Positions 18,614-64,000 of a DNA stretch of 64,000 nt are shown piece by piece. The DNA comes from Octopus sinensis. Lineage: Eukaryota. The notes under the pieces are model-generated. The model worked only from the letters and a program-made list of their open reading frames with translations. It was not told where the DNA came from and did no database searches. The first letter of the stretch is position 1, and each line of letters opens with the position of its first letter. Location of the stretch: the NCBI RefSeq assembly GCF_006345805.1, contig NC_042999.1, forward strand, positions 72,106,001 through 72,170,000. Direction: 5' to 3'. The translations under genes were made by a program, and so were the position numbers.

Positions 18614-19318
18614 CACTTCAAATATTCGTTATTTAATATATTATATTCAGTGGAAAACACAATCATATCTATTAGCAAACAGAACATATGAGCCGTACAC
18701 ATCACTCACACAAACGCACACACACACTTATACATGTATATATACACAAAGGCACACGCACGAACACACACACACTATCTAATTAAAATATTTCAATAAT
18801 CAAGAATAGAACATTTTACAAAGTGGAGACATACTTATTTTAAAATCCGTTATGACTGTGACAAATTGCTTATACAATATCATTTTTGTTTCTTTTTTTA
18901 TTTTATTTGTTTCTGTGATTAGACTGCGACCGTCTTGGGGCACCGCCTTGAAGACTGTTAATCGAACAAGGTGACTGCACTTCCTATTTTATTATTTTTT
19001 AACATGTGGCAAACCGCTAGGTTACAGGAACTTAAAAACACCAACACCGGTTGTAAAGCGGTAGTTGAGGATAAGCACAAGTGCAAGACACACTCGTACA
19101 CACAAACACATATACACATATACGTTGTCTATATGCTGCGTTTTCAATATTTACGCGCGTCTTCTCTTATTGAATTTCTTTTATAGTTCCTTATTATATG
19201 TTGTTTGTGCCACATATAGGACTTAAAGACATGTATTGTGTCCTTTAGATAAATAATATTTATCCCTCACCAGATGGGGTACATTTTTTTAATACAGAAC
19301 AGTGCATTTTATATATGA

Positions 19319-19386
<68 letters not shown>

Positions 19387-20480: not shown

Positions 20481-21117
20481 TAAGTGAAGGATTTTTATTT
20501 ATTTATGTTTATACGTTAAAATGGCTGGAAAATTTCATTAATAGAGATACTGAAATTTTAAATGAGAGTTTGTTTTATTTGGCTTTTGTTTTGTTTTTTT
20601 TTCTTTCTTTCACATTATTACGGTGGGGAAATCTGAAAAGCTTAACAACAGCCGATGAGTAGTCAAGACACGAAAGAAAGCAACTGAAAAAGATTTGGGG
20701 TTGAAATATCTCGACAAAATGGCAGCCAAGTCTGTTGTTTTTAATAGAATTATGTAGGTAGAAAGAAAACAGACATTCAATAAACATTTTTCTCCCAGCA
20801 TTTTTTAATCAAATAGTTATCATATAGCTATTAGCTAAAATAATATCATTACTTTATTGGTATATTTATTTGTCTATATTATGAGCCTACATCATTTCTA
20901 ATTTTACGATTTTATTCATACCATTATTAGTGTATTTAGTTTGTTACAGTGCTGTATTGGTTTGCATATAGCTGTGTTTATGCATTAACATACATATACA
21001 TTGAATGGATTTTGCACGTTTGCATTCGAGTTTGCTTTTGACTTTATATTCATGAACGCGTTGTTTTACCTAGATATCCGTGCTTATGTATGTATTTACG
21101 TGTACATATATATATAT

Positions 21118-45911: not shown

Positions 45912-46509
45912 TGTATGTGTGTGTATGTGTGTGTTCGAAATTGCAGCACACACATTGCAACACAAAAACTGCAACACAAAGTAAAGATAATCCTTTCTGC
46001 TATAGGCACAAGGCCAGCAATTTTGTGGGAGTGGCAAACTGGTTATAAAGATCCCAGTGCTCAAGTGGTACTTATTTCATTGATTTGACCTCGGCAGCAT
46101 GTGAAACCACTATGTAAATGTGGACTAAATGCTTAGCGGCATTTTGTCCTCTGTACCAACGATTCTGCTAGCCCGCCGCTTTAGTTATAATAATAATAAG
46201 AGGATGAAGAAAAAAAAGAAGAAGAAGAAGAAGAAGAAGAAGGAGGAGGAGGAGGAGGAAGAAGAAGAAGAAAAGGAGGAGGAGAAGAAGAAGAAGAAGA
46301 AGAAGAATATTTCTTTATTGTCCATAGAGGCTAAACATAGATGGGAGAACAAGGGCAGACAAAGGGATTAAGTCGATTACATCAACCCCTGTGCGTAACT
46401 GGGAATTATTTATTCGACCCCGAAAGGATGAGAACAAAGTCAACCTCGGCGACATTTGAATTCAGGACGTAACGGCAAATAATAATAATAGCAACAACTA
46501 CAACAACAA

Positions 46510-47021
46510 TACCTGGCAGTGGCTCTCATGGCTTCTGATCTTAACTGATTGGAAGTGTTATCAAGTACATTGTTTTGGCTTGTCAGTTGTTTGACCTTAA
46601 CCAGTTGACCGTGTCCCTTAGTTGCTGACGATATGTGCATCTCTGATCATGAACAGAAGTAATGGGGGAGCATCCATCATAGCCGTGTGTTGAAAGGAAT
46701 TCTTAGAGGTTTGGATAATTCACCTTTGGAAACATGAGTGGTTCGTTCAACTTCCTTAAACCATCCTTATTCAGAGACCTTTTGAGCGGGATGGGCTACT
46801 CGACCAGAAGAAAATTCTAACTGGGCTCCACCTGCAAGGTCATGCGCTGTTTATCTTCATATGAGATCACCATGTCGCGCACATGTGCTTGTGATGCATG
46901 TGCCTAGTGTACCCTTATCAGACGGGTAGTCATGATGGGTATACTGGGCTTCGTATATTTTATCCCAGTGTCACTCTGATGGCATACACTGCTCTCTCAC
47001 TCAACAACAATAATAATAATC

Positions 47022-47105: not shown

Positions 47106-48115
47106 ATATCACATTTTGGTATAATGTTGGGGGAGGGTAAGTTGATTACATTGATTCCAGTACTCAACTAGCATTTCTTTTATTGATCTCGCAAAGTCGA
47201 CCTTTGCGGCATTTGAACTCAGAAAGTAAAGACGGACGAAATGCCGCTAATAATTTTGTCCGGCGTGCTAACGATTCTTACACCTCGCCACCTTAGCCAA
47301 AATAAAGATAATACATTGTTTAATATCTTTTCCCTTTTTTTTACCATTCAATTTGAAATAAAGAATGTGGGTGTGTCTCACTTTTTGTTTTCCCGTTCTT
47401 ATTCGTCGATGTCAGAGGTTTACCAGAACGAAAACGGATGATGATACGTTGCGTAAATGGATCTATATGAACATGTTTTTGCTCTTCGACATTGTTTACA
47501 GACTTCCATAGCACTTTGGGATAAATTATCTTTGCTGAAATATTATTGTGGCTCGCTTCGTTATTTACAAAGGGTTAAATCTAAAAAGAAATAACACTTC
47601 AGTTATTAGTAGTTAATTTTTGTATACATTTTCGTGGTGTGGACACTCTGTGTATATGTTATTCGTGATTCAACGCACACAAAAACTTCTCACCTTACCT
47701 TAACATTCCAGACAATATCATTTAATCTCAACACGTATACAACCTTTAGTTATAGCATCTTATGAATCCGCCTACCTATTGTTATAATTTTTATCAGATG
47801 TTCTTCTGTGATGTCGAAAAAAGTAAAATGAAATAATTATTGTTTGAATTTTTACTGTGTTTGTAACTGAACATCTGCAGTAGTTCTGAAACAGCATGAT
47901 AATGTTTATGGTAACGTTAGCTATTGTGTATTTTGATGGTGTTTCTTTGATAACGCTGTTATTGTTAATGGAAATTTGTTGTTTGTATGATCCTAAGTTC
48001 GTACAAACAAACACTCATACACACACTTACACACACGCACGCTCACACACATATACTCATGAATATATACATGTGTGCGTGCTTGTGTGTGTAGATACAT
48101 GGACAGTTAGTTAGC

Positions 48116-48183
<68 letters not shown>

Positions 48184-48305
48184 AAGAATGTATTTTGAAT
48201 AAATGCAGTATGCATATACAGCCACACACACACACACACACAACACACACACACACACACAACACATGTATGTATGCAAACATGCGCACATTATATATAT
48301 ATATA

Positions 48306-48580
48306 TCTTTATATATTTAAAACTGAGAATCTGTTTGTCTGTCTGTCTGTATGTCTGTGTGTTTCCCTAAAACTTGAGAACTACACAACCAATTTCATTC
48401 AAATTTTACACATGCCTTACTTAGGGTCCGGGGAGTGTCATCGGCAAAAGAAATGTTCAACTTCTTGTCTAGAGCGAGCCCATAGCAATATCATATCTTC
48501 TCCACTATTTCAGTATTACGTGTTAAAAGTGAAACAAAAACGTTTGTTCTCTATTTTATGTCAGATACTTTCACTTTAAC
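48306..48580 (+). mobile_element. 5' part of a non-autonomous Helitron-type element, 3' CTAG end not seen
   Basis: A|TCTTTATATATTTAAAA start, (GTCT)n, CCAATTTCATTCAAATTTTACACA block, same architecture as the 5840-6224 element; no hairpin-CTAG|T end before 48843. Confidence 0.6.
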
Positions 48581-48842
48581 AAAAAATAATAATAACAATT
48601 GAATTATATATAGTAAGTAATAATTAAAATCAATAAAGTAACATGAACAAAAGTAAAAATAGCAATTGGTTAAAATTGCATCAATGATTTGAACTTGAAT
48701 AAGTGGTTTCACATAATGGGAATAAATTAAAAATAAAATTAACGTGCAGAAAAGGAATAGTCCAGATGGATAATAAAAAATTAAATTAAAGAAAAGACTA
48801 TTGTCTATAAAGTATACAATGTAGAGAAAAAGGAAATTCGAA

Positions 48843-50601
48843 CAGCGTGTCGGAAATTTACCCACGTGTGTTGTTATCTGTGATTAGACGTTGAAATTTT
48901 GTTGTGTAAAGTGATTAATATCGCGCAAGGCATTTGCCTCCACGTTTGGAAACCTTCTGAAGAAGGTGAATTGACCCTCTAGTCATGGCGACTTACGCGG
49001 GGGTCACGGGAAAGAATAATAATGATTCGGCAATAATCGTGAAGGATGTTTTCTTTGAGAAAAGTAAAATCAAAGAATATGAAAAGCTATTCAAAAGGGA
49101 GGGTGATAGCGTGAAGCTAATCCCCCCCGCGAAGCAAAGGAGGACAAGGAAAACAAAACTGTAACGTATAGAACCCAGGACAAAAGTACAAAGAAACTGG
49201 CAAGAGTGGAGATAGCAGAGATCGAAAAATGTCTGGGAGACATAATGGAAAATCGACCTACGTGAGTAGAGGAAAAAAATTGGTACGGTGGAGGTGAGAT
49301 GTGCAACGGAAGAAATTGCAGCCTCACTGGCTACCACTGTTCTAAGAGCGGAAACATTTATAATGTGGCCCTCATACAAGGGAAGAAGAGGGGTCCGGGT
49401 TAAAATCCCGAATATACCCCCAGAGTAAAAACAGAATGGCTGGCAACAGCTATTCTAGGAGCAGCAGAAGAGGAAGTGGAGGTGGAATCCTTTAAGGAGT
49501 CCAACGCAGTAAATTGGAGAGGATATGGGGTAGAACTGTGTTTGATGGCCACAAAAGAGGACATTGAAAGGTTCCCCTATAGATAGAATCGAAGACGAGA
49601 AAACCCTCAGTGTAATTGTAGAGGAAGAAAGCCAAACGCTACTTGTGCGGGACAAGGGGGCACATTAAAAAAGAGTGCCCGTTATATGAATTCATGGCGG
49701 AGTATGAAAGGAAATGAAGAAAAGAAGAATACGGAAAGGAAAAGAAAACATAGAAAAGGAGACAAAACAACAAGAGAAAGGAAATAATAAGTCAACGAAG
49801 GAAAAAGAAATAAAAAAGAAAGAAAGAAATAACCAAACAAAACAGAGTCAGGAAAAGAAAAAGGAAAAGAACAACAGGAAAAAAACAAGAGAGAGAACAG
49901 AACCAAACGAAAAGAAAAGACGGCACACAAAAAGAAAAAGAAAAGGAACATAAAACACGAGAGAAAGAAGAACAGACAAGAACCAAAAAGACAAGAGAAG
50001 GAAGAAGAAGAGAAAAGAAGGCAAAAAGAGAGAAGAGAGAAAAACAAAGAGAGGAAACAAGGAAGAAATAAGCCCGAAAAGAAAAAAACGAGAAAACGTA
50101 GGACGGAAAAAGATTACTACAAGTTAATAACCTTCCATTCCAGCCCCGAAATGAAGGAATTGACATGTAGTATGGAGGGACATGTGTGGGTCAACAGGAT
50201 GACTGATCAGTGGCAGGAGACTGCTCTGATCCCCGAAGAAAGAGTCGCTGAGTTCCTCAGAGCAGCTGGAGAGAGTGTAATTTTTTACACGGGTGTTCGA
50301 GTGAAAGAGCGGCTGCCTGAGGGCTCAGTGATTGACTTTAGAGACTTGAAAAGTATTATGGAATACGTGTGAGATTGTGAGAGGAGAGAGAAAAAGAAGA
50401 GAAAAGAAAAAAAAAATTGTGAACTATAGTGACGAAAATGTACCTCTCGATTCCGGGGATCGAGTGGGCATTTGCATCTCATTGTAAATTCTTTCATTTG
50501 TCATTTTTATTTTTCCCTTCTTGTCATTTCGCTTTCTTATTTTAAGTTCCCCGATTGTATTGTCCCTCTCTATGTTCGCCCCTTGTGGGTAGTAATAAAA
50601 T
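48843..50601 (+). mobile_element. ORF1-only non-LTR element, family A, unit A1 (1759 bp)
   Basis: Starts CAGCGTGTCGGAAA; ATG 48985, stop 50372; ends GTGGGTAGTAATAAAAT; several homopolymer frameshifts. Confidence 0.9.
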
Positions 50602-52363
50602 CAGCGTGTCGGAAATTTACCCACGTGTGTTGTTATCTGTGATTAGACGTTGAAATTTTGTTGTGTAAAGTGATTAATATCGCGCAAGGCATTTGCCTCC
50701 ACGTTTGGAAACCTTCTGAAGAAGGTGAATTGACCCTCTAGTCATGGCGACTTACGCGGGGGTCACGGGAAAGAATAAATGATTCGGCAATAATCGTGAA
50801 GGATGTTTTCTTTGAGAAAAGTAAAATCAAAGAATATGAAAAGCTATTCAAAAGGGAGGGTGATAGCGTGAAGCTAATCCCCCCCGCGAAAGCAAAGGAG
50901 GACAAGGAAAACAAAACTGTAACGTATAGAACCCAGGACAAAAGTACAAAGAAACTGGCAAGAGTGAGATAGCAGAGATCGAAAAATGTCTGGGAGACAT
51001 AATGGATAAATCGACCTACGTGAGTAGAGGAAAAAATTTGGTACGGTGGAGGTGAGATGTGCAACGGAAGAAATTGCAGCCTCACTGGCTACCACTGTTC
51101 TAAGAGCGGAAACATTTATAATGTGGCCCTCATACAAGGGAAGAAGAGGGGTCCGGGTTAAAATCCCGAATATACCCCCAGAAGTAAAAACAGAATGGCT
51201 GGCAACAGCTATTCTAGGAGCAGCAGAAGAGGAAGTGGAGGTGGAATCCTTTAAGGAGTCCAACGCAGTAAATTGGAGAGGATATGGGGTAGAACTGTGT
51301 TTGATGGCCACAAAAGAGGACATTGAAAGGTTCCCCTATAGAATAGAAATCGAAGACGAGAAAACCCTCAGTGTAATTGTAGAGGGAAGAAAGCCAAACT
51401 GCTACTTGTGCGGGACAAGGGGGCACATTAAAAAAGAGTGCCCGTTATATGAATTCATGGCGGAGTATGAGAAGGAAAATGAAGAAAGAAGAATGGGAAA
51501 TGAAAAAGAAAACATAGAAAAGAGACAAAACAACAAGAGAAAGGAAATAATAAGTCAACGAAGGAAAAAGAAATAAAAGAAAAGAAAGAAATAGAACCAA
51601 AACAGAGTCAGGAAAAGAAAAAGGAAAAGAAACAACAGGAAAAAAACAAGAGAGAGAACAGAACCAAACGAAAAGAAAAGACGGCACACAAAAAGAAAAA
51701 GAAAAGGAACATAAAACACGAGAGAAAGAGAGAACAGACAAAGAACCAAAAAGACAAGAGAAGAGAAGAAAGAAAAGAAGGCAAAAAGAGAGAAAGAGAG
51801 AAACAAAGAGAGGAGAACAAGGAAGAAATAAGCCCGAAAAGAAAAACGAGAGAAAACGTAGGACGGAAACAAGATTACTACAAGTTAATAACCTTCCATT
51901 CCAGCCCCGAAATGAAGGAATTGACATGTAGTATGGAGGGACATGTGTGGGTCAACAGGATGACTGATCAGTGGCAGGAGACTGCTCTGATCCCCGAAGA
52001 AAGAGTCGCTGAGTTCCTCAGAGCAGCTGGAGAGAGTGTAATTTTTTACACGGGTGTTCGAGTGAAAGAGCGGCTGCCTGAGGGCTCAGTGATTGACTTT
52101 AGAGACTTGAAAAGTATTATGGAATACGTGTGAGATTGTGAGAGGAGAGAGAAAAAAGAAAAAAAAAATTGTGAACTATAGGTGACGAAAATGTAACCTC
52201 TCGATTCCGGGGATCGAGTGGGCATTTGCATCTCATTGTAAATATTCTTTCATTTGTCATTTTTATTTTTATTTTTTCCCTTCTTGTCATTTCGCTTTCT
52301 TATTTTAAGTTCCCCGATTGTATTGTCCCCTCTATGTTCGCCCCTTGTGGGTAGTAATAAAAT
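50602..52363 (+). mobile_element. Family A unit A2 (1762 bp)
   Basis: Same termini; ATG 50744, stop 52133. Confidence 0.9.
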
Positions 52364-54140
52364 CACGTGTCGGAAATTTACCCACGTGTGTTGTTATCTG
52401 TGATTAGACGTTGAAATTTTGTTGTGTAAAGTGATTAATATCGCGCAAGGCATTTGCCTCCACGTTTGGAAACCTTCTGAAGAAGGTGAATTGACCCTCT
52501 AGTCATGGCGACTTACGCGGGGGTCACGGGAAAGAATAATAATGATTCGGCAATAATCGTGAAGGATGTTTTCTTTGAGAAAAGTAAAATCAAAGAATAT
52601 GAAAAGCTATTCAAAAGGGAGGGTGATAGCGTGAAGCTAATCCCCCCCGCGAAAGCAAAGGAGGACAAGGAAAACAAAACTGTAACGTATAGAACCCAGG
52701 ACAAAAGTACAAAGAAACTGGCAAGAGTGGAGATAGCAGAGATCGAAAAATGTCTGGGAGACATAATGGAAAATCGACCTACGTGAGTAGAGGAAAAAAA
52801 TTTGGTACGGTGGAGGTGAGATGTGCAACGGAAGAAATTGCAGCCTCACTGGCTACCACTGTTCTAAGAGCGGAAACATTTATAATGTGGCCCTCATACA
52901 AGGGAAGAAGAGGGGTCCGGGTTAAAATCCCGAATATACCCCCAGAAGTAAAAACAGAATGGCTGGCAACAGCTATTCTAGGAGCAGCAGAAGAGGAAGT
53001 GGAGGTGGAATCCTTTAAGGAGTCCAACGCAGTAAATTGGAGAGATATGGGGTAGAACTGTGTTTGATGGCCACAAAAGAGGACATTGAAAGGTTCCCCT
53101 ATAGAATAGAAATCGAAGACGAGAAAACCCTCAGTGTAATTGTAGAGGGAAGAAAGCCAAACTGCTACTTGTGCGGGACAAGGGGGCACATTAAAAAAAG
53201 TGCCCGTTATATGAATTCATGGCGGAGTATGAGAAGGAAAATGAAGAAAGAAGAATACGGGAAATGAAAAAGAAAACATAGAAAAGGAGACAAAACAACA
53301 AGAGAAAGGAAATAATAAGTCAACGAAGGAAAAAGAAATAAAAGAAAAGAAAGAAATAGAACCAAAACAGAGTCAGGAAAAGAAAAAGGAAAAAGAACAA
53401 CAGGAAAAAAACAAGAGAGAGAACAGAACCAAACGAAAAGAAAAGACGGCACACAAAGAAAAAGAAAAGGAACATAAAACACGAGAGAAAGAGAGAACAG
53501 ACAAAGAACCAAAAAGACAAGAGAAGGAAGAAGAAAGAAAAGAAGGCAAAAAGAGAGAAAGAGAGAAACAAAGAGAGGAGAACAAGGAAGAAATAAGCCC
53601 GAAAAGAAAAACGAGAGAAAACGTAGGACGGAAACAAGATTACTACAAGTTAATAACCTTCCATTCCAGCCCCGAAATGAAGGAATTGACATGTAGTATG
53701 GAGGGACATGTGTGGGTCAACAGGATGACTGATCAGTGGCAGGAGACTGCTCTGATCCCCGAAGAAAGAGTCGCTGAGTTCCTCAGAGCAGCTGGAGAGA
53801 GTGTAATTTTTTACACGGGTGTTCGAGTGAAAGAGCGGCTGCCTGAGGGCTCAGTGATTGACTTTAGAGACTTGAAAAGTATTATGGAATACGTGTGAGA
53901 TTGTGAGAGGAGAGAGAAGAAAGAAGAGAAAAAAGAAAAAAAAAATTGTGAACTATAGTGACGAAAATGTAACCTCTCGATTCCGGGGATCGAGTGGGCA
54001 TTTGCATCTCATTGTAAATATTCTTTCATTTGTCATTTTTATTTTTATTTTTCCCTTCTTGTCATTTCGCTTTTATTTTATTTAAGTTCCCCGATTGTAT
54101 TGTCCCCTCTATGTTCGCCCCTTGTGGGTAGTAATAAAAT
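52364..54140 (+). mobile_element. Family A unit A3 (1777 bp)
   Basis: Same termini (5' motif lacks one G); ATG 52505, stop 53898. Confidence 0.9.
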
Positions 54141-55920
54141 CAGCGTGTCGGAAATTTACCCACGTGTGTTGTTATCTGTGATTAGACGTTGAAATTTTGT
54201 TGTGTAAAGTGATTAATATCGCGCAAGGCATTTGCCTCCACGTTTGGAAACCTTCTGAAGAAGGTGAATTGACCCTCTAGTCATGGCGACTTACGCGGGG
54301 GTCACGGGAAAGAATAATAATGATTCGGCAATAATCGTGAAGGATGTTTTCTTTGAGAAAAGTAAAATCAAAGAATATGAAAAGCTATTCAAAAGGGAGG
54401 GTGATAGCGTGAAGCTAATCCCCCCCGCGAAAGCAAAAGAGGACAAGGAAAACAAAACTGTAACGTATAGAACCCAGGACAAAAGTACAAAGAAACTGGC
54501 AAGAGTGGAGATAGCAGAGATCGAAAAATGTCTGGGAGACATAATGGATAAATCGACCTACGTGAGTAGAGAAAAAAATTTGGTACGGTGGAGGTGAGAT
54601 GTGCAACGGAAGAAATTGCAGCCTCACTGGCTACCACTGTTCTAAGAGCGGAAACATTTATAATGTGGCCCTCATACAAGGGAAGAAGAGGGGTCCGGGT
54701 TAAAATCCCGAATATACCCCCAGAAGTAAAAACAGAATGGCTGGCAACAGCTATTCTAGGAGCAGCAGAAGAGGAGTGGAGGTGGAATCCTTTAAGGAGT
54801 CCAACGCAGTAAATTGGAGAGGATATGGGGTAGAACTGTGTTTGATGGCCACAAAAGAGGACATTGAAAGGTTCCCCTATAGAATAGAAATCGAAGACGA
54901 GAAAACCCTCAGTGTAATTGTAGAGGGAAGAAAGCCAAACTGCTACTTGTGCGGGACAAGGGGGCACATTAAAAAAGAGTGCCCGTTATATGAATTCATG
55001 GCGGAGTATGAGAAGGAAAATGAAGAAAAGAAGAATACGGGAAATGAAAAAGAAAACATAGAAAAGGAGACAAAACAACAAGAGAAAGGAAATAATAAGT
55101 CAACGAAGGAAAAAGAAATAAAAGAAAAGAAAGAAATAGAACCAAAACAGAGTCAGGAAAAGAAAAAGGAAAAAGAAACAACAGGAAAAAAACAAGAGAG
55201 AGAACAGAACCAAACGAAAAGAAAAGACGGCACACAAAAAGAAAAGAGGAACATAAAACACGAGAGAAAGAGAGAACAGACAAAGAACCAAAAAGACAAG
55301 AGAAGGAAGAAGAAAGAAAAGAAGGCAAAAAGAGAGAAAGAGAGAAACAAAGAGAGGAGAACAAGAAGAAATAAGCCCGAAAAGAAAAACGAGAGAAAAC
55401 GTAGGACGGAAACAAGATTACTACAAGTTAATAACCTTCCATTCCAGCCCCGAAATGAAGGAATTGACATGTAGTATGGAGGGACATGTGTGGGTCAACA
55501 GGATGACTGATCAGTGGCAGGAGACTGCTCTGATCCCCGAAGAAAGAGTCGCTGAGTTCCTCAGAGCAGCTGGAGAGAGTGTAATTTTTTACACGGGTGT
55601 TCGAGTGAAAGAGCGGCTGCCTGAGGGCTCAGTGATTGACTTTAGAGACTTGAAAAGTATTATGGAATACGTGTGAGATTGTGAGAGGAGAGAGAAGAAA
55701 GAAGAGAAAAAAGAAAAAAAAAAAATTGTGAACTATAGGTGACGAAAATGTAACCTCTCGATTCCGGGGATCGAGTGGGCATTTGCATCTCATTGTAAAT
55801 ATTCTTTCATTTGTCATTTTTATTTTTATTTTTTCCCTTCTTGTCATTTCGCTTTCTTATTTTAAGTTCCCCGATTGTATTGTCCCCTCTATGTTCGCCC
55901 CTTGTGGGTAGTAATAAAAT
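54141..55920 (+). mobile_element. Family A unit A4 (1780 bp)
   Basis: Same termini; ATG 54283, stop 55676. Confidence 0.9.
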
Positions 55921-56062
55921 CAGCGTGTCGGAAATTTACCCACGTGTGTTGTTATCTGTGATTAGACGTTGAAATTTTGTTGTGTAAAGTGATTAATATC
56001 GCGCAAGGCATTTGCCTCCACGTTTGGAAACCTTCTGAAGAAGGTGAATTGACCCTCTAGTC

Positions 56063-57461
56063 ATGGCGACTTACGCGGGGGTCACGGGAAAGAATAATAA
56101 TGATTCGGCAATAATCGTGAAGGATGTTTTCTTTGAGAAAAGTAAAATCAAAGAATATGAAAAGCTATTCAAAAGGGAGGGTGATAGCGTGAAGCTAATC
56201 CCCCCCGCGAAAGCAAAGGAGGACAAGGAAAACAACTGTAACGTATAGAACCCAGGACAAAAGTACAAAGAAACTGGCAAGAGTGGAGATAGCAGAGATC
56301 GAAAAATGTCTGGGAGACATAATGGATAAATCGACCTACGTGAGTAGAGGAAAAAAATTTGGTACGGTGGAGGTGAGATGTGCAACGGAAGAAATTGCAG
56401 CCTCACTGGCTACCACTGTTCTAAGAGCGGAAACATTTATAATGTGGCCCTCATACAAGGGAAGAAGAGGGGTCCGGGTTAAAATCCCGAATATACCCCC
56501 AGAAGTAAAAACAGAATGGCTGGCAACAGCTATTCTAGGAGCAGCAGAAGAGGAAGTGGAGGTGGAATCCTTTAAGGAGTCCAACGCAGTAAATTGGAGA
56601 GGATATGGGGTAGAACTGTGTTTGATGGCCACAAAAGAGGACATTGAAAGGTTCCCCTATAGAATAGAAATCGAAGACGAGAAAACCCTCAGTGTAATTG
56701 TAGAGGGAAGAAAGCCAAACTGCTACTTGTGCGGGACAAGGGGGCACATTAAAAAAGAGTGCCCGTTATATGAATTCATGGCGGAGTATGAGAAGGAAAA
56801 TGAAGAAAAGAAGAATACGGGAAATGAAAAAGAAAACATAGAAAAGGAGACAAAACAACAAGAGAAAGGAAATAATAAGTCAACGAAGGAAAAAGAAATA
56901 AAAGAAAAGAAAAATAATGAACCAAAACAGAGTCAGGAAAAGAAAAAGGAAAAAGAAACAACAGGAAAAAAACAAGAGAGAGAACAGAACCAAACGAAAA
57001 GAAAAGACGGCACACAAAAAGAAAAAGAAAAGGAACATAAAACACGAGAGAAAGAGAGAACAGACAAAGAACCAAAAAGACAAGAGAAGGAAGAAGAAAG
57101 AAAAGAAGGCAAAAAGAGAGAAAGAGAGAAACAAAGAGAGGAGAACAAGGAAGAAATAAGCCCGAAAAGAAAAACGAGAGAAAACGTAGGACGGAAACAA
57201 GATTACTACAAGTTAATAACCTTCCATTCCAGCCCCGAAATGAAGGAATTGACATGTAGTATGGAGGGACATGTGTGGGTCAACAGGATGACTGATCAGT
57301 GGCAGGAGACTGCTCTGATCCCCGAAGAAAGAGTCGCTGAGTTCCTCAGAGCAGCTGGAGAGAGTGTAATTTTTTACACGGGTGTTCGAGTGAAAGAGCG
57401 GCTGCCTGAGGGCTCAGTGATTGACTTTAGAGACTTGAAAAGTATTATGGAATACGTGTGA
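56063..57461 (+). CDS. Gag-like ORF1 protein of family A (~466 aa after restoring a 2-nt deletion near 56233)
   Basis: MATYAGV N-terminus; RRM-like KFGTVEVRCATEEIAASL and VRVKIPNIPPEV; CX2CX4HX4C knuckle CYLCGTRGHIKKEC (56721-56762); K/E-rich linker; SPKRK; ~85-aa C-terminal domain. The 392-aa ORF 56283-57461 is open. Confidence 0.85.
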
Positions 57462-57535
57462 GATTGTGAGAGGAGAGAGAAGAAAGAAGAGAAAAAAGAA
57501 AAAAAAAATTGTGAACTATAGTGACGAAAATGTAA

Positions 57536-57560
57536 CCTCTCGATTCCGGGGATCGAGTGG
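57536..57560 (+). promoter_or_regulatory. Conserved 3' UTR stem-loop (in every A and B unit; B copy at 61268-61292)
   Basis: CC(T/G)CTCGAT-T(C/T)CGGGG-ATCGAG-TGG; the A/B differences keep or add wobble pairs. Confidence 0.6.
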
Positions 57561-57701
57561 GCATTTGCATCTCATTGTAAATATTCTTTCATTTGTCATT
57601 TTTATTTTTATTTTTTCCTTCTTGTCATTTCGCTTTCTTATTTTAAGTTCCCCGATTGTATTGTCCCCTCTATGTTCGCCCCTTGTGGGTAGTAAAAAAA
57701 T

Positions 57702-59483
57702 CAGCGTGTCGGAAATTTACCCACGTGTGTTGTTATCTGTGATTAGACGTTGAAATTTTGTTGTGTAAAGTGATTAATATCGCGCAGGCATTTGCCTCCA
57801 CGTTTGGAAACCTTCTGAAGAAGGTGAATTGACCCTCTAGTCATGGCGACTTACGCGGGGGTCACGGGAAAGAATAATAATGATTCGGCAATAATCGTGA
57901 AGGATGTTTTCTTTGAGAAAAGTAAAATCAAAGAATATGAAAAGCTATTCAAAAGGGAGGGTGATAGCGTGAAGCTAATCCCCCCCGCGAAAGCAAAGGA
58001 GGACAAGGAAAACAAAACTGTAACGTATAGAACCCAGGACAAAAGTACAAAGAAACTGGCAAGAGTGGAGATAGCAGAGATCGAAAAATGTCTGGGAGAC
58101 ATAATGGATAAATCGACCTACGTGAGTAGAGGAAAAAAATTTGGTACGGTGGAGGTGAGATGTGCAACGGAAGAAATTGCAGCCTCACTGGCTACCACTG
58201 TTCTAAGAGCGGAAACATTTATAATGTGGCCCTCATACAAGGGAAGAAGAGGGGTCCGGGTTAAAATCCCGAATATACCCCCAGAAGTAAAAACAGAATG
58301 GCTGGCAACAGCTATTCTATTCTAGGAGCAGCAGAAGAGGAAGTGGAGGTGGAATCCTTTAAGGAGTCCAACGCAGTAAATTGGAGAGGATATGGGGTAG
58401 AACTGTGTTTGATGGCCACAAAAGAGGACATTGAAAGGTTCCCCTATAGAATAGAAATCGAAGACGAGAAAACCCTCAGTGTAATTGTAGAGGGAAGAAA
58501 GCCAAACTGCTACTTGTGCGGGACAGGGGGCACATTAAAAAAGAGTGCCCGTTATATGAATTCATGGCGGAGTATGAGAAGGAAAATGAAGAAAAGAAGA
58601 ATACGGGAAGAAAAAGAAAACATAGAAAAGGAGACAAAACAACAAGAGAAAGGAATAATAAGTCACGAAGGAAAAATAAATAAAAGAAAAGAAAGAAATA
58701 GAACCAAAACAGAGTCAGGAAAAGAAAAAGGAAAAAGAAACAACAGGAAAAAAACAAGAGAGAGAACAGAACCAAACGAAAAGAAAAGACGGCACACAAA
58801 AAGAAAAAGAAAAGGAACATAAAACACGAGAGAAGAGAGAACAGACAAAGAACCAAAAAGACAAGAGAGAATAAAGAAAGAAAAGAAGGCAAAAAGAGAG
58901 AAAGAGAGAAACAAAGAGAGGAGAACAAGGAAGAAATAAGCCCGAAAAGAAAAACGAGAAAACGTAGGACGGAAACAAGATTACTACAAGTAATACCTTC
59001 CATTCCATCCAGCCCCGAAATGAAGGAATTGACATGTAGTATGGAGGGACATGTGTGGGTCAACAGGATGACTGATCAGTGGCAGGAGACTGCTCTGATC
59101 CCCGAAGAAAGAGTCGCTGAGTTCCTCAGAGCAGCTGGAGAGAGTGTAATTTTTTACACGGGTGTTCGAGTGAAAGAGCGGCTGCCTGAGGGCTCAGTGA
59201 TTGACTTTAGAGACTTGAAAAGTATTATGGAATACGTGTGAGATTGTGAGAGGAGAGAGAAGAAAGAAGAGAAAAAAGAAAAAAAAAATTGTGAACTATA
59301 GGTGACGAAAATGTAACCTCTCGATTCCGGGGATCGAGTGGGCATTTGCATCTCATTGTAAATATTCTTTCATTTGTCATTTTTATTTTTATTTTTTCCC
59401 TTCTTGTCATTTCGCTTTCTTATTTTAAGTTCCCCGATTGTATTGTCCCCTCTATGTTCGCCCCTTGTGGGTAGTAATAAAAT
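57702..59483 (+). mobile_element. Family A unit A6 (1782 bp)
   Basis: Same termini; ATG 57843, stop 59241. Confidence 0.9.
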
Positions 59484-61386
59484 CAGCGTGTCGGAAATCT
59501 ATCCACATGTGTTGTGAGTTATTTTGTATGTGAAAATTGAAAAAAAAACTGTTAAAAATTGTCAAAAAATTGAATCGCGCGAGGCGTTTGCCGCTACGTG
59601 TTTGAACCTTTTATAGAAGGTGTGTCGACCCTCAAGTCATGGAGACTTACGCGGGGGTTGCCACAACAAAAAGTGACGAGTCTCTTAGAATAAAAGAAGT
59701 GTTCTTTAGAAAAGAACAATTGAAGGAATACGAGAAGTTTGTCAAAAGGGAGGGTGACAGCGTGAAGCTGGTCCCGCCTGTGGAAACAATAGAAGAGAAA
59801 ATAACAGACGATAACGTATAGAACGCAAGATAGAAACACGAGAAAACTGGTGAGAGTGACGATTGAAGAAATAGAGAAATGTCTGGGGGACATCATGAAA
59901 AAAGCGACTTTTGTAGACAGAGGAAAGAAATATGGTACGGTGGAGGTGAGATGCGCAACAAAGGAAGTGGCGGCCTCATTGGCTTCCACTGTCCTGAAAG
60001 CGGAAAATTTCACCATGTGGCCGACGTATAAAGGAAGACGAGGGGTACGGGTAAGAGTCCCAAAGGTGCCCCCAAATATTAAAACAGAAATGCTGGTAAC
60101 AGCCATTATTGGGGCAGCAAAAGAGGAAGTAGAAATAGGGTCAATTAAGGAGACGAACGTTGTAAATTGGAAGGGATTCGGAGTCGAGTTTTGGCTGATG
60201 GCCACAATGGAAGACATCGAAAGATTTCCCTTCCAAATAGAAATAGAAAACGAGAAAACAATTAGTGTAATAGTGGAAGGCAGAAAACCGAATTGCTACC
60301 TGTGCGGTTCAAGAGGGCACATAAAAAAGGAATGTCCGCTGTATGAATTCACAGCGGAGCAAAAAGAGACACAAAGTGGAGAGAAGGAAAACGAACACGA
60401 AGGAAAGAACAGCGAAAACAAGGAAAAGGAAATAACGGAGAAACAACAAGAGAAGGGAAGTAACAGCGCACTGAAGGAAAATGAAAACAAAGGGAAGAAG
60501 ATAGTAGAAAGGAGCAAAATTCACAGGGTGCAGAAGTAGTGGAGAAGGAGCCAAGCAGCAAGAAGAAAGAAAAGGAAAGTACATTAAGGAAAGAGAAAAA
60601 GCAGAAAAGAACAAGAGAAGGAACAGAACCAAGAGAAAGGAAAGATGGTATGCAAAAAGGAAAAGAAACAACAGGAAAGGAACTTAAGGCACAGGGTAGA
60701 GAGACGGCAGACAAAGAGCCAAAAAGACAAGAGAAGGAAAAGAAAGAAGAGAAAGCAAAAAGAGAAAAGAGAGAAACCGAGGGAGGAGAAAAAAGGGAAG
60801 TAAGTCCTAAGAGAAAAACTAGAGAAAACGTAGGTACGAATAGAAAATTAAAATACTATGGAACGTTGATCCATCACAGGCACTGTGAGGAGATGGAAGA
60901 TTTAATAAGCGTAACAAACGGATATACGTGGGTCAGGATGGGCACCGAATGGAAAAAACAGGTGCACTCGTCCACGAGAACGACGCCGAGGCGTTCATCG
61001 AGGCAGCTGGCAGAACGTGTCAAAACATATGAAATGCCGACTTACAAGGTGGCCTCGAACGATGGAATTTACTCAGATTTGGTAGACATAATGAGTATAT
61101 ATAAAAGAAGGTATTGTGAAAACTTTTAATTGGAAATGATAAAAGAACTTTAATTCGGAAAAAAAAAAGAATGTTGAACTTTGTAAAACTTTTGGAATGT
61201 ATGTTGAAAATGTAAAAATGTTTTATTTGAAATATTGTTGACGAATAAAAATAATGACGAAATGTAACCGCTCGATTTCGGGGATCGAGTGGGCATTGCA
61301 CCACATTGTACAAACTTCATAATTCATTATTCATTTTCCCGATTGTATTGTCCCATCTATGTAGCCCCTAGTGGGTAATAATAAAA
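59484..61386 (+). mobile_element. ORF1-only non-LTR element, family B, unit B1 (1903 bp)
   Basis: Starts CAGCGTGTCGGAAATC; ends GTGGGTAATAATAAAA; diverged paralogue of A with no ORF2. Confidence 0.88.
59639..61104 (+). CDS. Gag-like ORF1 of family B (frameshifted as assembled)
   Basis: METYAGV..., KYGTVEVRCATKEV, CYLCGSRGHIKKEC, SPKRKTRENVG; the second read (61761-61910) gives ...AFIEAAG...YSDLVDIMEYI*. Confidence 0.8.
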
Positions 61387-61660
61387 CAAGCGTGTCGGAA
61401 TCAATTTTTTGCGTTATTGTGAGTTGATGTATTTTTGCTCTCGTACTGTTGTCTCTGTTATTGTGTACTGTTGGTCTGCCTGTTTGTCTTTGCTTGTTGT
61501 CGACTGACGAAGTCAGCCTTCGCGCGAACTTCGCGTTGGTGTTCCCCCTCAGTGGGGAGAACTACAATTGGTTTGGATTTACCAAGGCTTGTTTAGCCAT
61601 TTGTTCAAGATGGAGTCCCCCATCTCTTGTTCGCCCGTGACGAGCGAGGATGGTCCCGGC
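61387..61660 (+). mobile_element. 5' end of a family C element, cut by the gap
   Basis: CAAGCGTGTCGGAA start; near-identical to 62201-62482. Confidence 0.8.
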
Positions 61661-61760
61661 NNNNNNNNNNNNNNNNNNNNNNNNNNNNNNNNNNNNNNNN
61701 NNNNNNNNNNNNNNNNNNNNNNNNNNNNNNNNNNNNNNNNNNNNNNNNNNNNNNNNNNNN
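61661..61760. other. Assembly gap (100 N)
   Basis: Run of N. Confidence 1.
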
Positions 61761-62200
61761 ACAGGTGCACTCGTCCACGAGAACGACGCCGAGGCGTTCA
61801 TCGAGGCAGCTGGCAAGAACGTGTCAAAACATATGAAATGCCGACTTACAAGGTGGCCTCGAACGATGGAAGTTTACTCAGATTTGGTAGACATAATGGA
61901 GTATATATAAAGAAAAGGTATTGTGAAAACTTTAATTTGGAAATGATAAAAAGAACTTTAAATTCGGAAAAAAAAAAAGAAATGTTGAACTTTGTAAAAC
62001 TTTTGGAATGTATGTTGAAACTATAAAATGTTTTATTTGGAAAATATTGTTGACGAATAAAAAATAAATGACGAAATGTAACCGCTCGATTTCGGGGATC
62101 GAGTGGGCATTGCACCACATTGTACAAACTTCATAATTCATTATTCATTTTCCCGATTGTATTGTCCCATCTATGTAGCCCCTAGTGGGTAATAATAAAA
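61761..62200 (+). mobile_element. 3' part of family B (B2), possibly the same locus as 60959-61386
   Basis: Near-identical to the B1 3' end apart from small indels. Confidence 0.8.
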
Positions 62201-62430
62201 CAAGCGTGTCGGAAATCAATTTTTTGCGTTATTGGTGAGTTGATGTATTTTTGCTCTCGTACTGTTGTCTCTGTTATTGTGTACTGTTGGTCTGCCTGTT
62301 TTGTCTATTGTTGTCTGACTGACGAAGTCAGTCTTCGCGCGAAGACTTCGCGTTGGTGTTCCCCCCTCAGTGGGGGAGAACTACAATTGGTTTGGATTTA
62401 CCAAAGGCTTGTTAGGGCCATTTGTTCAAG

Positions 62431-63791
62431 ATGGAGTCCCCCATCTCTTGTTCGCCCGTGACGAGCGAGGATGAGTGCCCGGCGTTGTCGCCAAGAAAAA
62501 AAGAGGCGTTGTCGCCGAAGAAAAAAGAGGCGGCGTCGCCCAGGAGAGTGGAAGGACCAGTACCAGCATCGGCTCCAGCAGGGAAATTCGCTGAAGTGGC
62601 TGGGAGGAGGATCAAAGGGATAGATGTGGAAAGTTTTAAAAGATTTGCAGACTGTGTAGAGGGGGAGGGCACAGAGGTGACTGTGGCCACAAGCATACAA
62701 ATACATGACGATGTGGAAGGGGAAAGAATGATATATGGAACTTACGACACAGCGAGGGGAATGATCCAAAGAATCGAAGAGAAGATGGAGTTTTGTCTAG
62801 AACCTTTTATGGATAGAGTAACGTATATAAGCGGAGGAGAGAGGTGCGGCACGGTGGAGGTGCGTTTTGCTACGGAGGAGATGGCGAAGAAACTGTCGAT
62901 GGAGCCGATCAAAGCGGAAAGCATTGTCTTACTACCATTGTATAGAGGAAGGGGGACGTCGAGAATTTCAATGAACAACATACCGCCGGAGGCAGATGCT
63001 GAATGTCTGGTGGCTGCAGTGATGGTGGGTCTGGAGGAAGAAATAAACATCCTCCAGGCCACAGTGGAGGAGGAGGAGTTTTGGAAGGGGCGGAGAATAG
63101 TGATGGCCATTCGGGCGGAGGTGCAAACACTGGAAGAAGTTCCAGAAAAGGTAGAGATTGGTGAAGACGAGAAAGTGGCAGTTTTCGCGGAGGGCAGGAG
63201 GCCGAGGTGCTTCGGCTGCGGCAAGAAGGGTCATGTAAGGGCGGAATGCCAACCCAAACCCAAACCGCAGAAAGCACCTAAGCCAAAAGAGAGGGAGGAT
63301 AGTGTGTCGCCGGAAGCAGCGTCGGACGGCCCAGAGGGGAAGACTGAAGGTGTGGAGGTGACGGTGACAGCGGAGCCAGCGGCGGAGGAGGGAAGGAGCG
63401 AGGAAAAGATAAATGAGGAGGGGTGGGCGAAAATTACCGGAAAAAAAAAAGAAAAACGGAAACCACCCCTCCCAGAGTGGTTTTAATGGGGAAGGAGGAG
63501 TCAATGAACTCGTATATGGCCGTAAGGGCGGCAAATGGCAGACTCGGAAGCGTGTTGGCGGCTGTGGCCAGGGTGGAGAGGGTAGTGAGGAAGAACGACT
63601 TTGTAATTTGCAGAATGGGCCGGAGGGATTGCGGGCGGATGGAGTCAGAAATCTTCCATGACGTAGGCCCACTTAGATTGGATGTGACATCTCCACATAT
63701 ATTCGATGGCCTACGTCAGACTCCCCCGCGAGGCCCGGAAGAGGAGTTGGAAGAACAGGAGAGGACCGAACCACTGATGTGGGGTAAGTAA
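62431..63791 (+). CDS. ORF1 of family C (Gag-like, CCHC knuckle); one frameshift at the A10 run 63441-63450
   Basis: RCGTVEVRFATEEMA, RISMNNIPPE and EGRRPRCFGCGKKGHVRAEC (knuckle 63208-63249) align to A/B. The frame of 63423-63791 continues to a TAA overlapping the ORF2 ATG. Confidence 0.8.
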
Positions 63792-64000
63792 TGGATTGCA
63801 TTTGTGTTGGTTGTTTGAATGTGCGCGGCCTGGGAGCGGGCTGGAAGCAGGGTCGCTTCCTGCATGATATCAGGTCGCGTAATTTGGATGTTATTGTTGC
63901 TACAGAAACCCGGTTAGAGGGGCCAAGAGGTCTGCTCCCGCTGTTTGACGGCTACGAGAGTTTTTTCTCTCCTGGCAGTCCTACAGGCGGGAGTGGGGTG
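63791..64000 (+). CDS. ORF2 N-terminus: APE-type endonuclease (partial, 70 codons open)
   Basis: My translation: MDCICVGCLNVRGLGAGWKQGRFLHDIRSRNLDVIVATETRL...GGSGV, matching the L1/Tx1 endonuclease motifs NVRGL, D(I/V)..xET and GV. Confidence 0.88.
   Translation, partial: MDCICVGCLNVRGLGAGWKQGRFLHDIRSRNLDVIVATETRLEGPRGLLPLFDGYESFFSPGSPTGGSGV

What the first reader, a model, noticed from the sequence alone, without database searches (positions are those of the whole stretch)
50580..62215. Every junction is base-precise: a 3' AATAAAA end fused to C(A)AGCGTGTCGGAA, including between different families
Seen: A-A (50601, 52363, 54140, 55920, 57701), A-B (59483) and B-C (61386, 62200) junctions all join ...GTGGGTA(G/A)TAATAAAA(T) to the motif (one G missing at 52364; TAAAAAAA at 57701), and the flank-A1 junction reads TTCGAA|CAGCGTGTCGGAA. 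No unit is 5'-truncated, which is unusual for non-LTR elements. Unequal crossover can multiply A but does not readily explain precise A-B and B-C joints. Inference: independent insertions at one sequence, either the elements' own 5' end (self-targeting) or a ~13-bp target duplicated as a TSD each time.
Basis: partly seen in the sequence, partly recalled or inferred. Interest (0 to 1): 0.82.

Follow-up and report, generated by a model that had tools for sequence, protein, structure and literature searches.

The report
LINE stack at one reused target site
The repeated 13-16-base motif at every junction is most likely the duplicated target site of an octopus Tx1-like retrotransposon family, whose members inserted again and again at one spot inside another mobile element; this is a known way of building such arrays.

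Summary
The junctions are real and base-precise. They run from 48843, earlier than the finding's start.

- **Assembly gap:** the 703 bases left of the gap and the 723 bases right of it are the same sequence. The two B-C joints therefore count as one observation.
- **Source:** the window comes from an Octopus genome.
- **Elements:** C is an autonomous L1/Tx1-like LINE. A and B are 1.8-1.9-kb relatives that keep only an ORF1-like gene and share C's last ~45 nt.
- **Flank:** the 'host flank' is one arm of a ~1-kb Helitron-like repeat.
- **Same layout elsewhere:** five O. vulgaris copies of that repeat show it too, with arm, ORF1-only units, C, then the other arm.
- **TSD evidence:** the junction sequence differs between loci. 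Three loci show it is a target-site duplication: a perfect 14-bp copy on both sides of C, a 12-bp site present four times but once in uninterrupted sister copies, and a 19-20-bp SINE site with an empty copy nearby.
- **Order of insertion:** unit sequences interleave between arrays and are ordered by position, oldest next to C and youngest at the 5' edge.
- **Verdict:** this favours repeated insertion at a target that each duplication regenerates.
- **Side finding:** the window's C copy carries ADAR-type A-to-G hypermutation.

The parts
48291..48842 (+). Left arm ('U') of a ~1-kb Helitron-like repeat that hosts the array. It starts after a (TA)n run with TCTTTATATAT and ends ...GGAAATTCGAA.
   Evidence: The same ~480-550 bp precedes the arrays in L001, L003, L007 and L008. 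The three copies compared (window, L001, L003) are ~5% apart pairwise, and sequence further out differs.
48843..48857 (+). First copy of the junction spacer CAGCGTGTCGGAAAT, read as the left copy of the target-site duplication.
   Evidence: By position it matches the 14-bp TSD CAACATGGAGGAAA that flanks C in L007.
48843..59483 (+). Six head-to-tail A units of ~1.78 kb each: 48843-50601, 50602-52363, 52364-54140, 54141-55920, 55921-57701 and 57702-59483. Each consists of the spacer, a 5' UTR, one ORF1-like gene (466 aa in the consensus, with a CCHC knuckle and a K/E-rich stretch) and a 3' tail ending GTGGGTAGTAATAAAAT. None has a reverse transcriptase.
   Evidence: The A protein is 34% identical to LINE ORF1 over 231 aa. 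Differences between units are private and mostly indels.
59484..61386 (+). B unit, a second ORF1-only family ~71% identical to A. It has the same spacer at its 5' end and a tail ending GTGGGTAATAATAAAA.
   Evidence: B copies 92-96% identical lie next to C in L007 and L008.
61387..61660 (+). First 274 nt of C (spacer CAAGCGTGTCGGAAT, 5' UTR and start of ORF1), cut off by the gap.
   Evidence: Colinear with 62201-62483.
61661..61760 (.). Assembly gap. The sequences on its two sides are duplicates of each other, not neighbours within one element.
61761..62200 (+). Last 440 nt of B, a second rendering of 60958-61386.
62201..64000 (+). C, an autonomous L1/Tx1-like LINE that runs off the window. Its parts are the spacer (62201-62216), ORF1 (62431-63486, 351 aa, CCHC knuckle) and the start of ORF2 with the endonuclease (from 63791). 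This copy is A-to-G hypermutated.
   Evidence: Full-length relatives are ~5.2 kb with Exo_endo_phos, RVT_1 and zf-RVT domains. The best named relative is Xenopus Tx1 ORF2. Editing signature.

Best explanation
The window holds a stack of non-LTR retrotransposons that inserted one after another at a single position inside a ~1-kb Helitron-like repeat.

C is an autonomous L1-superfamily, Tx1-like LINE. A and B are non-autonomous relatives that keep only an ORF1-like gene and share C's terminal ~45 nt. Presumably the reverse transcriptase of C-type elements copies them for that reason.

Each insertion by target-primed reverse transcription duplicates 12-20 bp of target. The left copy of that duplication, together with the untouched upstream arm, recreates the original target. 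The next element therefore lands at the same base, on the 5' side of the stack. The result is a head-to-tail array with one copy of the duplicated target at every joint, whatever families are involved, and with the oldest unit (C) at the 3' end.

The motif C(A)AGCGTGTCGGAA(AT) is this locus's version of that duplicated target.

**Shown:**
- the junction anatomy;
- the TSD nature of the spacer at sister loci;
- the reuse of one site by different families;
- the positional age order.

**Inferred:**
- that the endonuclease prefers this site (contexts GATTTGAA|CAAC and GGATTAA|CAAT);
- that A and B are mobilised in trans;
- that unequal exchange may have added some of the six identical A units.
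For: **1. The spacer is a target-site duplication.**
- In L007, C is flanked on both sides by a perfect CAACATGGAGGAAA, followed by the right arm D.
- In L008, an array of B, B and C sits at another site. CAATTCCAGTCT occurs four times there, with 1-base variants. It occurs once, uninterrupted, in the D arms of L002 and L003, which serve as empty sites.
- In L004, two different ORF1-only relatives (F, then E) lie inside a tRNA-derived SINE with three copies of CAGAAACGTYAGCACGCCG. An empty SINE copy lies 8 kb away.

**2. The spacer follows the locus, not the family.**
- L003's A and C both carry CACATGGCTCCAAGCTAT.
- L1_A8 and L3_A1 differ by 0.7% in the body yet carry different spacers.

**3. 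The same layout recurs.** Six copies of the host repeat (the window plus L001, L002, L003, L007 and L008) show ORF1-only units followed by C, between the arms wherever an array end lies within the locus. The unit content differs: A x6 + B; A x8; A x>=8; A x1; F, A, A/B; B x2. No unit lies 3' of C at the three loci where the C|D joint sits at this site (L002, L003, L007) or in L008.

**4. Units are ordered by age and interleave between arrays.**
- C-distal units of L001 and L002 and the window consensus are 0.3-1.3% apart.
- C-proximal units form a different type. L1_A1 and L1_A8 differ by 4.6%.
- B lies next to C in the window, L007 and L008.

**5. Old and young A types are subfamilies of a coding lineage.** They differ mainly at third codon positions (39-41 differences, against 10-14 at each of the first two), so the difference is not in-place decay.

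**6. Spacers can differ between near-identical units.** L002 spacers differ while the unit bodies are 0.3-2% apart. Unequal exchange would copy spacer and body alike.

**7. Family assignment and precedent.**
- ORF2 scores 307-314 bits against Xenopus Tx1, 211 against human L1 ORF2p and 90 against R2.
- Many Tx1-clade elements show target preference, and tandem insertions of SINEU-3, a SINE family reported in the same paper, 'sandwiching a TSD' are on record (PMC4494074).
- Double insertion is the accepted origin of the Drosophila R1 array (PMC5932611).
Against: - The 3' end of the window's own array lies beyond base 64000, so the TSD cannot be shown in the window itself.
- No empty copy of the host repeat at the main site was available. 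Every locus was found through an ORF1 protein, so only occupied copies could be found.
- The middle of the spacer varies far more between loci, and within L002, than the unit bodies do: ATGGAG, ATCGAG, AGCGAG, GTGTCG. Simple duplication does not explain this.
- The window's six A units are identical apart from noise, so they fit unequal exchange equally well.
- If the host repeat moved together with an already inserted C, the first C insertion would be one event rather than several.
- In arrays of related autonomous elements (L005, L006, L009), part of the junction sequence recurs between loci and seems to belong to the elements. Those arrays do not count as TSD evidence.
Confidence: 0.78

Rival explanations
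1. One insertion per family was followed by DNA-level amplification. Unequal crossover or replication slippage between the flanking repeats multiplied the units, so the precise joints are simply copies of one joint.
For: The window's A1-A6 have identical spacers and differ only by private noise. Runs of near-identical neighbours exist in L001 (A5-A7, 0.2-0.7%) and L002. The B-C duplicate around the gap could be such a duplication.
Against: - It cannot make A-B, B-C or F-E joints.
- Units cluster by type across arrays, not by array.
- L002 spacers differ between near-identical units.
- Array content differs between loci in a consistent order.

As a contributor to the six A units in the window it remains quite possible, roughly even odds. 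The 0.1 refers to it being the whole explanation.
Confidence: 0.1
2. Self-targeting: the motif is the conserved 5' terminus of all three families and the endonuclease cuts just upstream of it, so elements home to each other's 5' ends.
For: In the window, A, B and C all begin with the motif. New units do go immediately 5' of an existing unit. A contribution of the resident element to site choice cannot be excluded, because every occupied site has C on its right.
Against: The same families begin with other sequences at other loci (L003, L007, L008). The sequence also follows the last element and continues into target DNA. In L004 it is part of an uninterrupted SINE.
Confidence: 0.06
3. A single-event concatemer: during one integration the reverse transcriptase jumped from the 5' end of one RNA to the 3' end of another (C, then B, then A and so on). 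This would give precise head-to-tail joints with C, the first template, at the 3' end.
For: C is always at the 3' end. End-to-end template jumping is known for the R2 enzyme (from memory, not checked here). There are small variations at the joints (an extra T or A).
Against: RNA-to-RNA jumps would not place a copy of the target between units. Units within one array belong to subfamilies 4.6% apart, laid down in the same order at different loci, which points to evolutionary time rather than one event.
Confidence: 0.04
4. Assembly artefact: the array, or its copy number, was produced by a noisy long-read assembly.
For: The window has many 1-bp indel errors and a redundant join at the gap.
Against: The same architecture is present at five loci of an independent chromosome-level O. 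vulgaris assembly. Only the copy number and the B-C repeat in the window are doubtful.
Confidence: 0.02

Closest known systems
Target-preferring Tx1-clade LINEs and SINEU-3 tandem insertions (Tx1L inside the Tx1D DNA transposon; SINEU-3 in Mariner-N4_AMi; PMC4494074)
   Same: - L1-superfamily ORF2 with endonuclease, reverse transcriptase and zf-RVT domains.
- The best named relative is Tx1 ORF2.
- Insertion at one position of a non-autonomous DNA transposon.
- A ~12-16-bp TSD.
- Tandem insertions of the non-autonomous element 'sandwiching a TSD', explained in that paper by sequential insertion.
   Different: - The host is a Helitron-like repeat.
- The non-autonomous units are 1.8-kb ORF1-coding elements, not SINEs.
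- Stacks reach 8 or more units from several families, in a consistent age order.
- A second site in the same repeat and sites in a SINE are also used, so specificity is a preference rather than absolute.
- Clade membership was not tested by phylogeny.
Double insertion giving tandem transposable elements; the Drosophila melanogaster R1 array with 33-nt rDNA duplications between units (PMC5932611)
   Same: Head-to-tail non-LTR elements separated by identical copies of the duplicated target. The model is repeated insertion at one site, possibly followed by unequal exchange.
   Different: Here different families share one stack. The sequence data indicate many separate insertions rather than one dimer that later expanded.
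Drosophila telomeric arrays (HeT-A, TART, TAHRE)
   Same: Head-to-tail arrays that mix a Gag/ORF1-only element with autonomous relatives (from memory).
   Different: The octopus arrays are internal and bounded on both sides by the arms of a repeat. They have a TSD at each joint, and the window's units show no 5' truncation.
HAL1 (half-L1), ORF1-only derivatives of L1 in mammals (from memory)
   Same: A non-autonomous element that retains only an ORF1 gene and depends on a LINE's ORF2 protein.
   Different: A and B are only 34% identical to the partner's ORF1. They share just the last ~45 nt with it and are found stacked at one site.

Membership tests
L1 superfamily / Tx1-like LINE (element C) | ORF2 with an N-terminal apurinic-type endonuclease, a reverse transcriptase and a C-terminal zinc-binding (CCHC, zf-RVT) domain | tested here: met
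   Pfam on a full-length relative (L006): RVT_1 6.5e-31, zf-RVT 1.7e-08, Exo_endo_phos 0.006 (below cut-off; this ORF lacks its N-terminus). Many homologues carry all three domains. The window shows the ORF2 start at 63791.
L1 superfamily / Tx1-like LINE (element C) | Closer to Tx1 than to other LINE groups | tested here: inconclusive
   Scores are 307-314 bits (31% identity over 777 aa) against Xenopus Tx1 ORF2, 211 bits against human L1 ORF2p and about 90 against R2. No phylogeny with reference clades was made.
L1 superfamily / Tx1-like LINE (element C) | ORF1 with a CCHC zinc knuckle | tested here: met
   zf-CCHC hit in the A ORF (8.7e-05, above cut-off). The hit in C ORF1 is weak (0.041). 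The motif CFGCGKKGHVRAEC is visible.
L1 superfamily / Tx1-like LINE (element C) | Target sequence preference | tested here: met
   Five copies of one repeat are occupied at the same base. A sixth is occupied at a second site with a similar context (GATTTGAA|CAAC against GGATTAA|CAAT). Ascertainment is biased towards occupied copies.
Tandem elements made by repeated insertion at one site (double insertion) | One copy of the TSD at every joint, so n+1 copies for n elements | tested here: met
   L004 has 3 copies for 2 elements. L008 has 4 copies for 3 elements. L007 has a perfect 14-bp copy on both sides of C. In the window itself only the left end and the internal joints are visible.
Tandem elements made by repeated insertion at one site (double insertion) | The empty site has a single, uninterrupted copy of the duplicated sequence | tested here: met
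   A SINE copy at L004:20593 and the D arms of L002 and L003 for the L008 site. No empty copy was available for the main site.
Tandem elements made by repeated insertion at one site (double insertion) | Units are independent insertions, not copies of a neighbour | tested here: met
   Units interleave between arrays and are ordered by type. Different families share one stack. For the window's six A units this is inconclusive.
Telomeric retrotransposon arrays (HeT-A/TART type) | Attachment to a chromosome end, no TSD, variable 5' truncation | tested here: not met
   The arrays lie between the two arms of a repeat and have internal flanks. TSDs are present, and the window's units are full length.
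Helitron (host repeat U+D) | 5' TC, 3' CTRR preceded by a GC-rich hairpin, insertion between A and T, no terminal inverted repeats | tested here: inconclusive
   The repeat starts (TA)n|TCTTTATATAT and ends GACCCGGCGACGACGGGTCTTTAATGCTAG|T in L002, L003 and L007, within (TA)n in L003 and L007. It was not compared with any Helitron library, and it has no coding part.
ADAR hyperediting fixed by retrotransposition (window copy of C) | Clustered, strand-specific A-to-G changes with G depleted 5' of the edited base, and polarity set by outgroups | tested here: met
   There are 112 G(window)/A(L003) sites against 3 the other way in 1184 nt. Outgroup elements have A at 54-81 of the 92 sites where L001 and L003 both have A. 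The edited fraction is 2% after G, against 37% after A, 39% after T and 19% after C.

The most novel reading that the evidence does not exclude
These sites work as self-renewing landing pads. Because each insertion rebuilds its own target on the 5' side, a Tx1-like LINE lineage and its ORF1-only parasites lay down chronologically ordered stacks. Those stacks would be a readable stratigraphy of family activity across many copies of a Helitron-like repeat. One layer in the window preserves an RNA that ADAR had hyperedited before it was copied back into DNA, which would be direct genomic evidence that RNA editing acts on LINE transcripts in the cephalopod germ line.
Probability: 0.35. Interest if true: 0.65.

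Novelty: new member of a known kind. Interest (0 to 1): 0.45.

Why it matters
It replaces a puzzling 'universal junction motif' with an ordinary mechanism, target-site duplication at a reused site. It also gives a clear example in a mollusc of target-preferring Tx1-like LINEs with protein-coding non-autonomous partners.

The ordered stacks could be used to date waves of retrotransposon activity in octopus genomes. The A-to-G hypermutated copy suggests that ADAR editing, which is very active in cephalopods, leaves heritable marks on retrotransposons.

For genome assembly, it flags a redundant scaffold join at 61661-61760.

Tried and rejected
- **Orthology of the window with L001.** I first read the shared flank as orthology. 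I rejected this because the left arms compared (window, L001, L003) are all about 5% apart and L007's outer flank does not match the window. I make no cross-species claim.
- **G-to-A (APOBEC-type) reading of the C differences.** Outgroups reversed this to A-to-G in the window copy.
- **L005 spacer as a third locus-specific TSD.** I withdrew this because similar sequences recur at L009 and in L006 5' regions.
- **Search for an empty host repeat.** None was found in the window or held loci (that run was flooded by microsatellite hits).
- **Rfam scan of 48000-64000 for a 5' self-cleaving ribozyme of the R2 type.** Only sub-threshold chance hits appeared.
- **Insertion on the 3' side guided by the shared tail.** Rejected because no unit lies 3' of C in any locus with a visible C|D joint.
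- **L003.** It never appeared as a file for scripts, so its pieces were brought in through alignments.
- **Literature search for ADAR-hyperedited genomic LINE copies.** Nothing specific was found.

Full report
**Observation**

Reading the region and listing every GTGTCGGAA confirms the junctions at the stated bases.

- The layout is: flank, then A1 from 48843; A-A joints after 50601, 52363, 54140, 55920 and 57701; A-B after 59483; B-C after 61386 and 62200.
- Each joint is ...GTGGGTA(G/A)TAATAAAA(T) followed by C(A)AGCGTGTCGGAA.
- The 12-mer occurs 8 times against 0.09 expected.
- Nothing related lies elsewhere in the window.

**The gap**

Bases 60958-61660 and 61761-62483 are the same sequence (691 matches, 7 mismatches, 30 indel columns). 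The match runs exactly up to both gap edges.

- The left edge is 275 nt into C and the right edge is 440 nt before the end of B. The sides are therefore not continuous, and the ORF listed across the gap is spurious.
- The two C pieces share 14 A-to-G sites. They differ at 6, which I judged from the pairwise alignment to lie in stretches with assembly indels.
- I treat the joints at 61386 and 62200 as one joint, most simply an unmerged contig overlap.
- The six A units differ only by changes private to one copy, mostly single-base indels. This points to a noisy assembly.

**What the units are**

- The A consensus (1784 bp) has one 466-aa ORF with a CCHC knuckle and no reverse transcriptase. It is 34% identical over 231 aa to the ORF1 of C-type elements.
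- B is a 71%-identical relative of A.
- C has ORF1 at 62431-63486 and an ORF2 that starts at 63791.
- Full-length relatives are ~5.2 kb with Exo_endo_phos, RVT_1 and zf-RVT domains. The best named homologue is Xenopus Tx1 ORF2 (307-314 bits), ahead of human L1 ORF2p (211) and R2 (~90).
- All families share the terminal ~45 nt.
- The closest proteins are from Octopus vulgaris and O. sinensis.

**Other loci**

Protein look-ups gave nine loci.

- Five O. vulgaris loci repeat the window's layout:
  - L001: U, A x8, C.
  - L002: A x>=8, C, D.
  - L003: U, A, C, D.
  - L007: U, F-like, A-like, A/B chimera, C, D.
  - L008: U, B, B, C, part of D.
- U (~480-550 bp, = window 48291-48842) and D (~495 bp) are the two arms of one repeat. 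The three left arms compared (window, L001, L003) are ~5% apart pairwise, and the outer flanks that were compared differ.
- The repeat begins TC after (TA)n and ends with a GC hairpin plus CTAG|T. That looks like a Helitron but was not tested against a library.

**The spacer is a target-site duplication**

- In L007, C has a perfect CAACATGGAGGAAA on both sides, and the right-hand copy runs into D.
- In L008, the stack sits 300 bp further along the repeat. CAATTCCAGTCT appears at all four joints there but once, uninterrupted, in the D arms of L002 and L003.
- In L004, two different ORF1-only relatives lie in a tRNA-derived SINE with three copies of CAGAAACGTYAGCACGCCG. An intact SINE copy nearby shows the empty site.
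- The spacer goes with the locus, not the family. L003's A and C share CACATGGCTCCAAGCTAT.
- The window's motif is therefore best read as its locus's copy of the duplicated target.

**How the stacks grew**

- Body-only distances between A units show that units interleave between arrays and follow position.
  - Units far from C in L001 and L002, and the window consensus, are 0.3-1.3% apart.
  - Units next to C form another type (L1_A8 against L3_A1, 0.7%).
  - The two ends of L001 differ by 4.6%.
- The two types differ mainly at third codon positions, so they are successive subfamilies of a coding lineage.
- B lies next to C in the window, L007 and L008.
- No unit lies 3' of C.
- In L002 the spacers differ between units whose bodies are 0.3-2% apart.
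- Together this favours repeated insertion on the 5' side, where the left TSD copy and the upstream arm rebuild the target. It argues against unequal exchange alone, RNA-to-RNA template jumping, and homing to an element-borne motif.
- Unequal exchange may still have contributed to the window's six identical A units.

**Known parallels**

- Many Tx1-clade LINEs are target-specific. Tandem SINEU-3 copies 'sandwiching a TSD' in a Mariner element were explained by sequential insertion (PMC4494074).
- The Drosophila R1 array with 33-nt duplications is the textbook case of double insertion (PMC5932611).
- This finding is a new example of that kind.

**Unexplained**

- The middle of the spacer varies much more than the unit bodies.
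- Arrays of autonomous relatives (L005, L006, L009) have junction sequences that are partly element-borne.

**Side finding**

The window's C differs from O. vulgaris copies by a one-way excess of G for A: 112 against 3 compared with L003. Outgroups show A at most of the 92 sites where L001 and L003 both have A, so A is ancestral. Editing is almost absent after G (2%, against 37-39% after A or T). This is the ADAR signature. This copy descends from a hyperedited RNA.

Noticed in passing
window 62201-64000 (and 61387-61660): The window's copy of C is A-to-G hypermutated relative to four O. vulgaris copies: 112 G/A sites against 3 the other way in 1184 nt when compared with L003. Outgroup elements show A at 54-81 of the 92 sites where L001 and L003 both have A, so A is ancestral. 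Edited sites almost never follow G. This is an ADAR-type signature fixed in DNA by retrotransposition. ORF1 stays open, as expected, because A-to-G changes cannot create stop codons.
   Followed up: yes
window 48291-48842; L002:18110-18604; L007:8096-8585 and 18895-19378: The array is embedded in a ~1-kb repeat with Helitron-like ends: TC after (TA)n at the start, and a GC hairpin plus CTAG|T at the end. The six copies examined are all occupied by LINE stacks.
   Followed up: partly
window 61568-62026: An ORF listed across the N gap is an artefact. The gap joins C's 5' end to B's 3' end, and the two sides duplicate each other.
   Followed up: yes
window 48843-59483: The six A units differ by private 1-bp indels that break the ORF in most copies, while the consensus ORF is intact (466 aa). 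This is a sign of an unpolished long-read assembly rather than of decay.
   Followed up: yes
L002:398-12856; L006:4425, 9704, 14984: Junction spacers are far more variable than the units they separate. Unit bodies are 0.3-2% apart in L002 and 99.6% identical in L006, yet the spacers differ at several bases or in length. I have no satisfying explanation. Error-prone 5' joining is one guess.
   Followed up: partly
L008:7330-16407: A stack of B, B and C sits at a second site of the same repeat (12-bp TSD CAATTCCAGTCT). The local context, GGATTAA|CAAT, resembles the main site's GATTTGAA|CAAC. That copy also lacks the ~300 bp between the two sites.
   Followed up: yes
L004:8606-12305 and 20593-20760: A tRNA-derived SINE is the target of two stacked ORF1-only relatives. 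A second insertion into another position of the same SINE family is seen at L009:19424 on the minus strand.
   Followed up: partly
L009:1-39929: A mixed array of F-like, C-like and E-like units lies between two haemocyanin genes. Fragments of the U arm are nearby in the opposite orientation.
   Followed up: no
L007:12042-13679: One unit is a chimera: an A-like 5' end (A positions 24-142) joined to a B body (from B position 425).
   Followed up: no
window 46478-47002 vs L001:2103-2665: A second stretch upstream of the array matches L001 (91% identity in substitutions only) at similar spacing, although the loci do not otherwise look orthologous. It may be another repeat or a sign of a larger duplicated block.
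   Followed up: no
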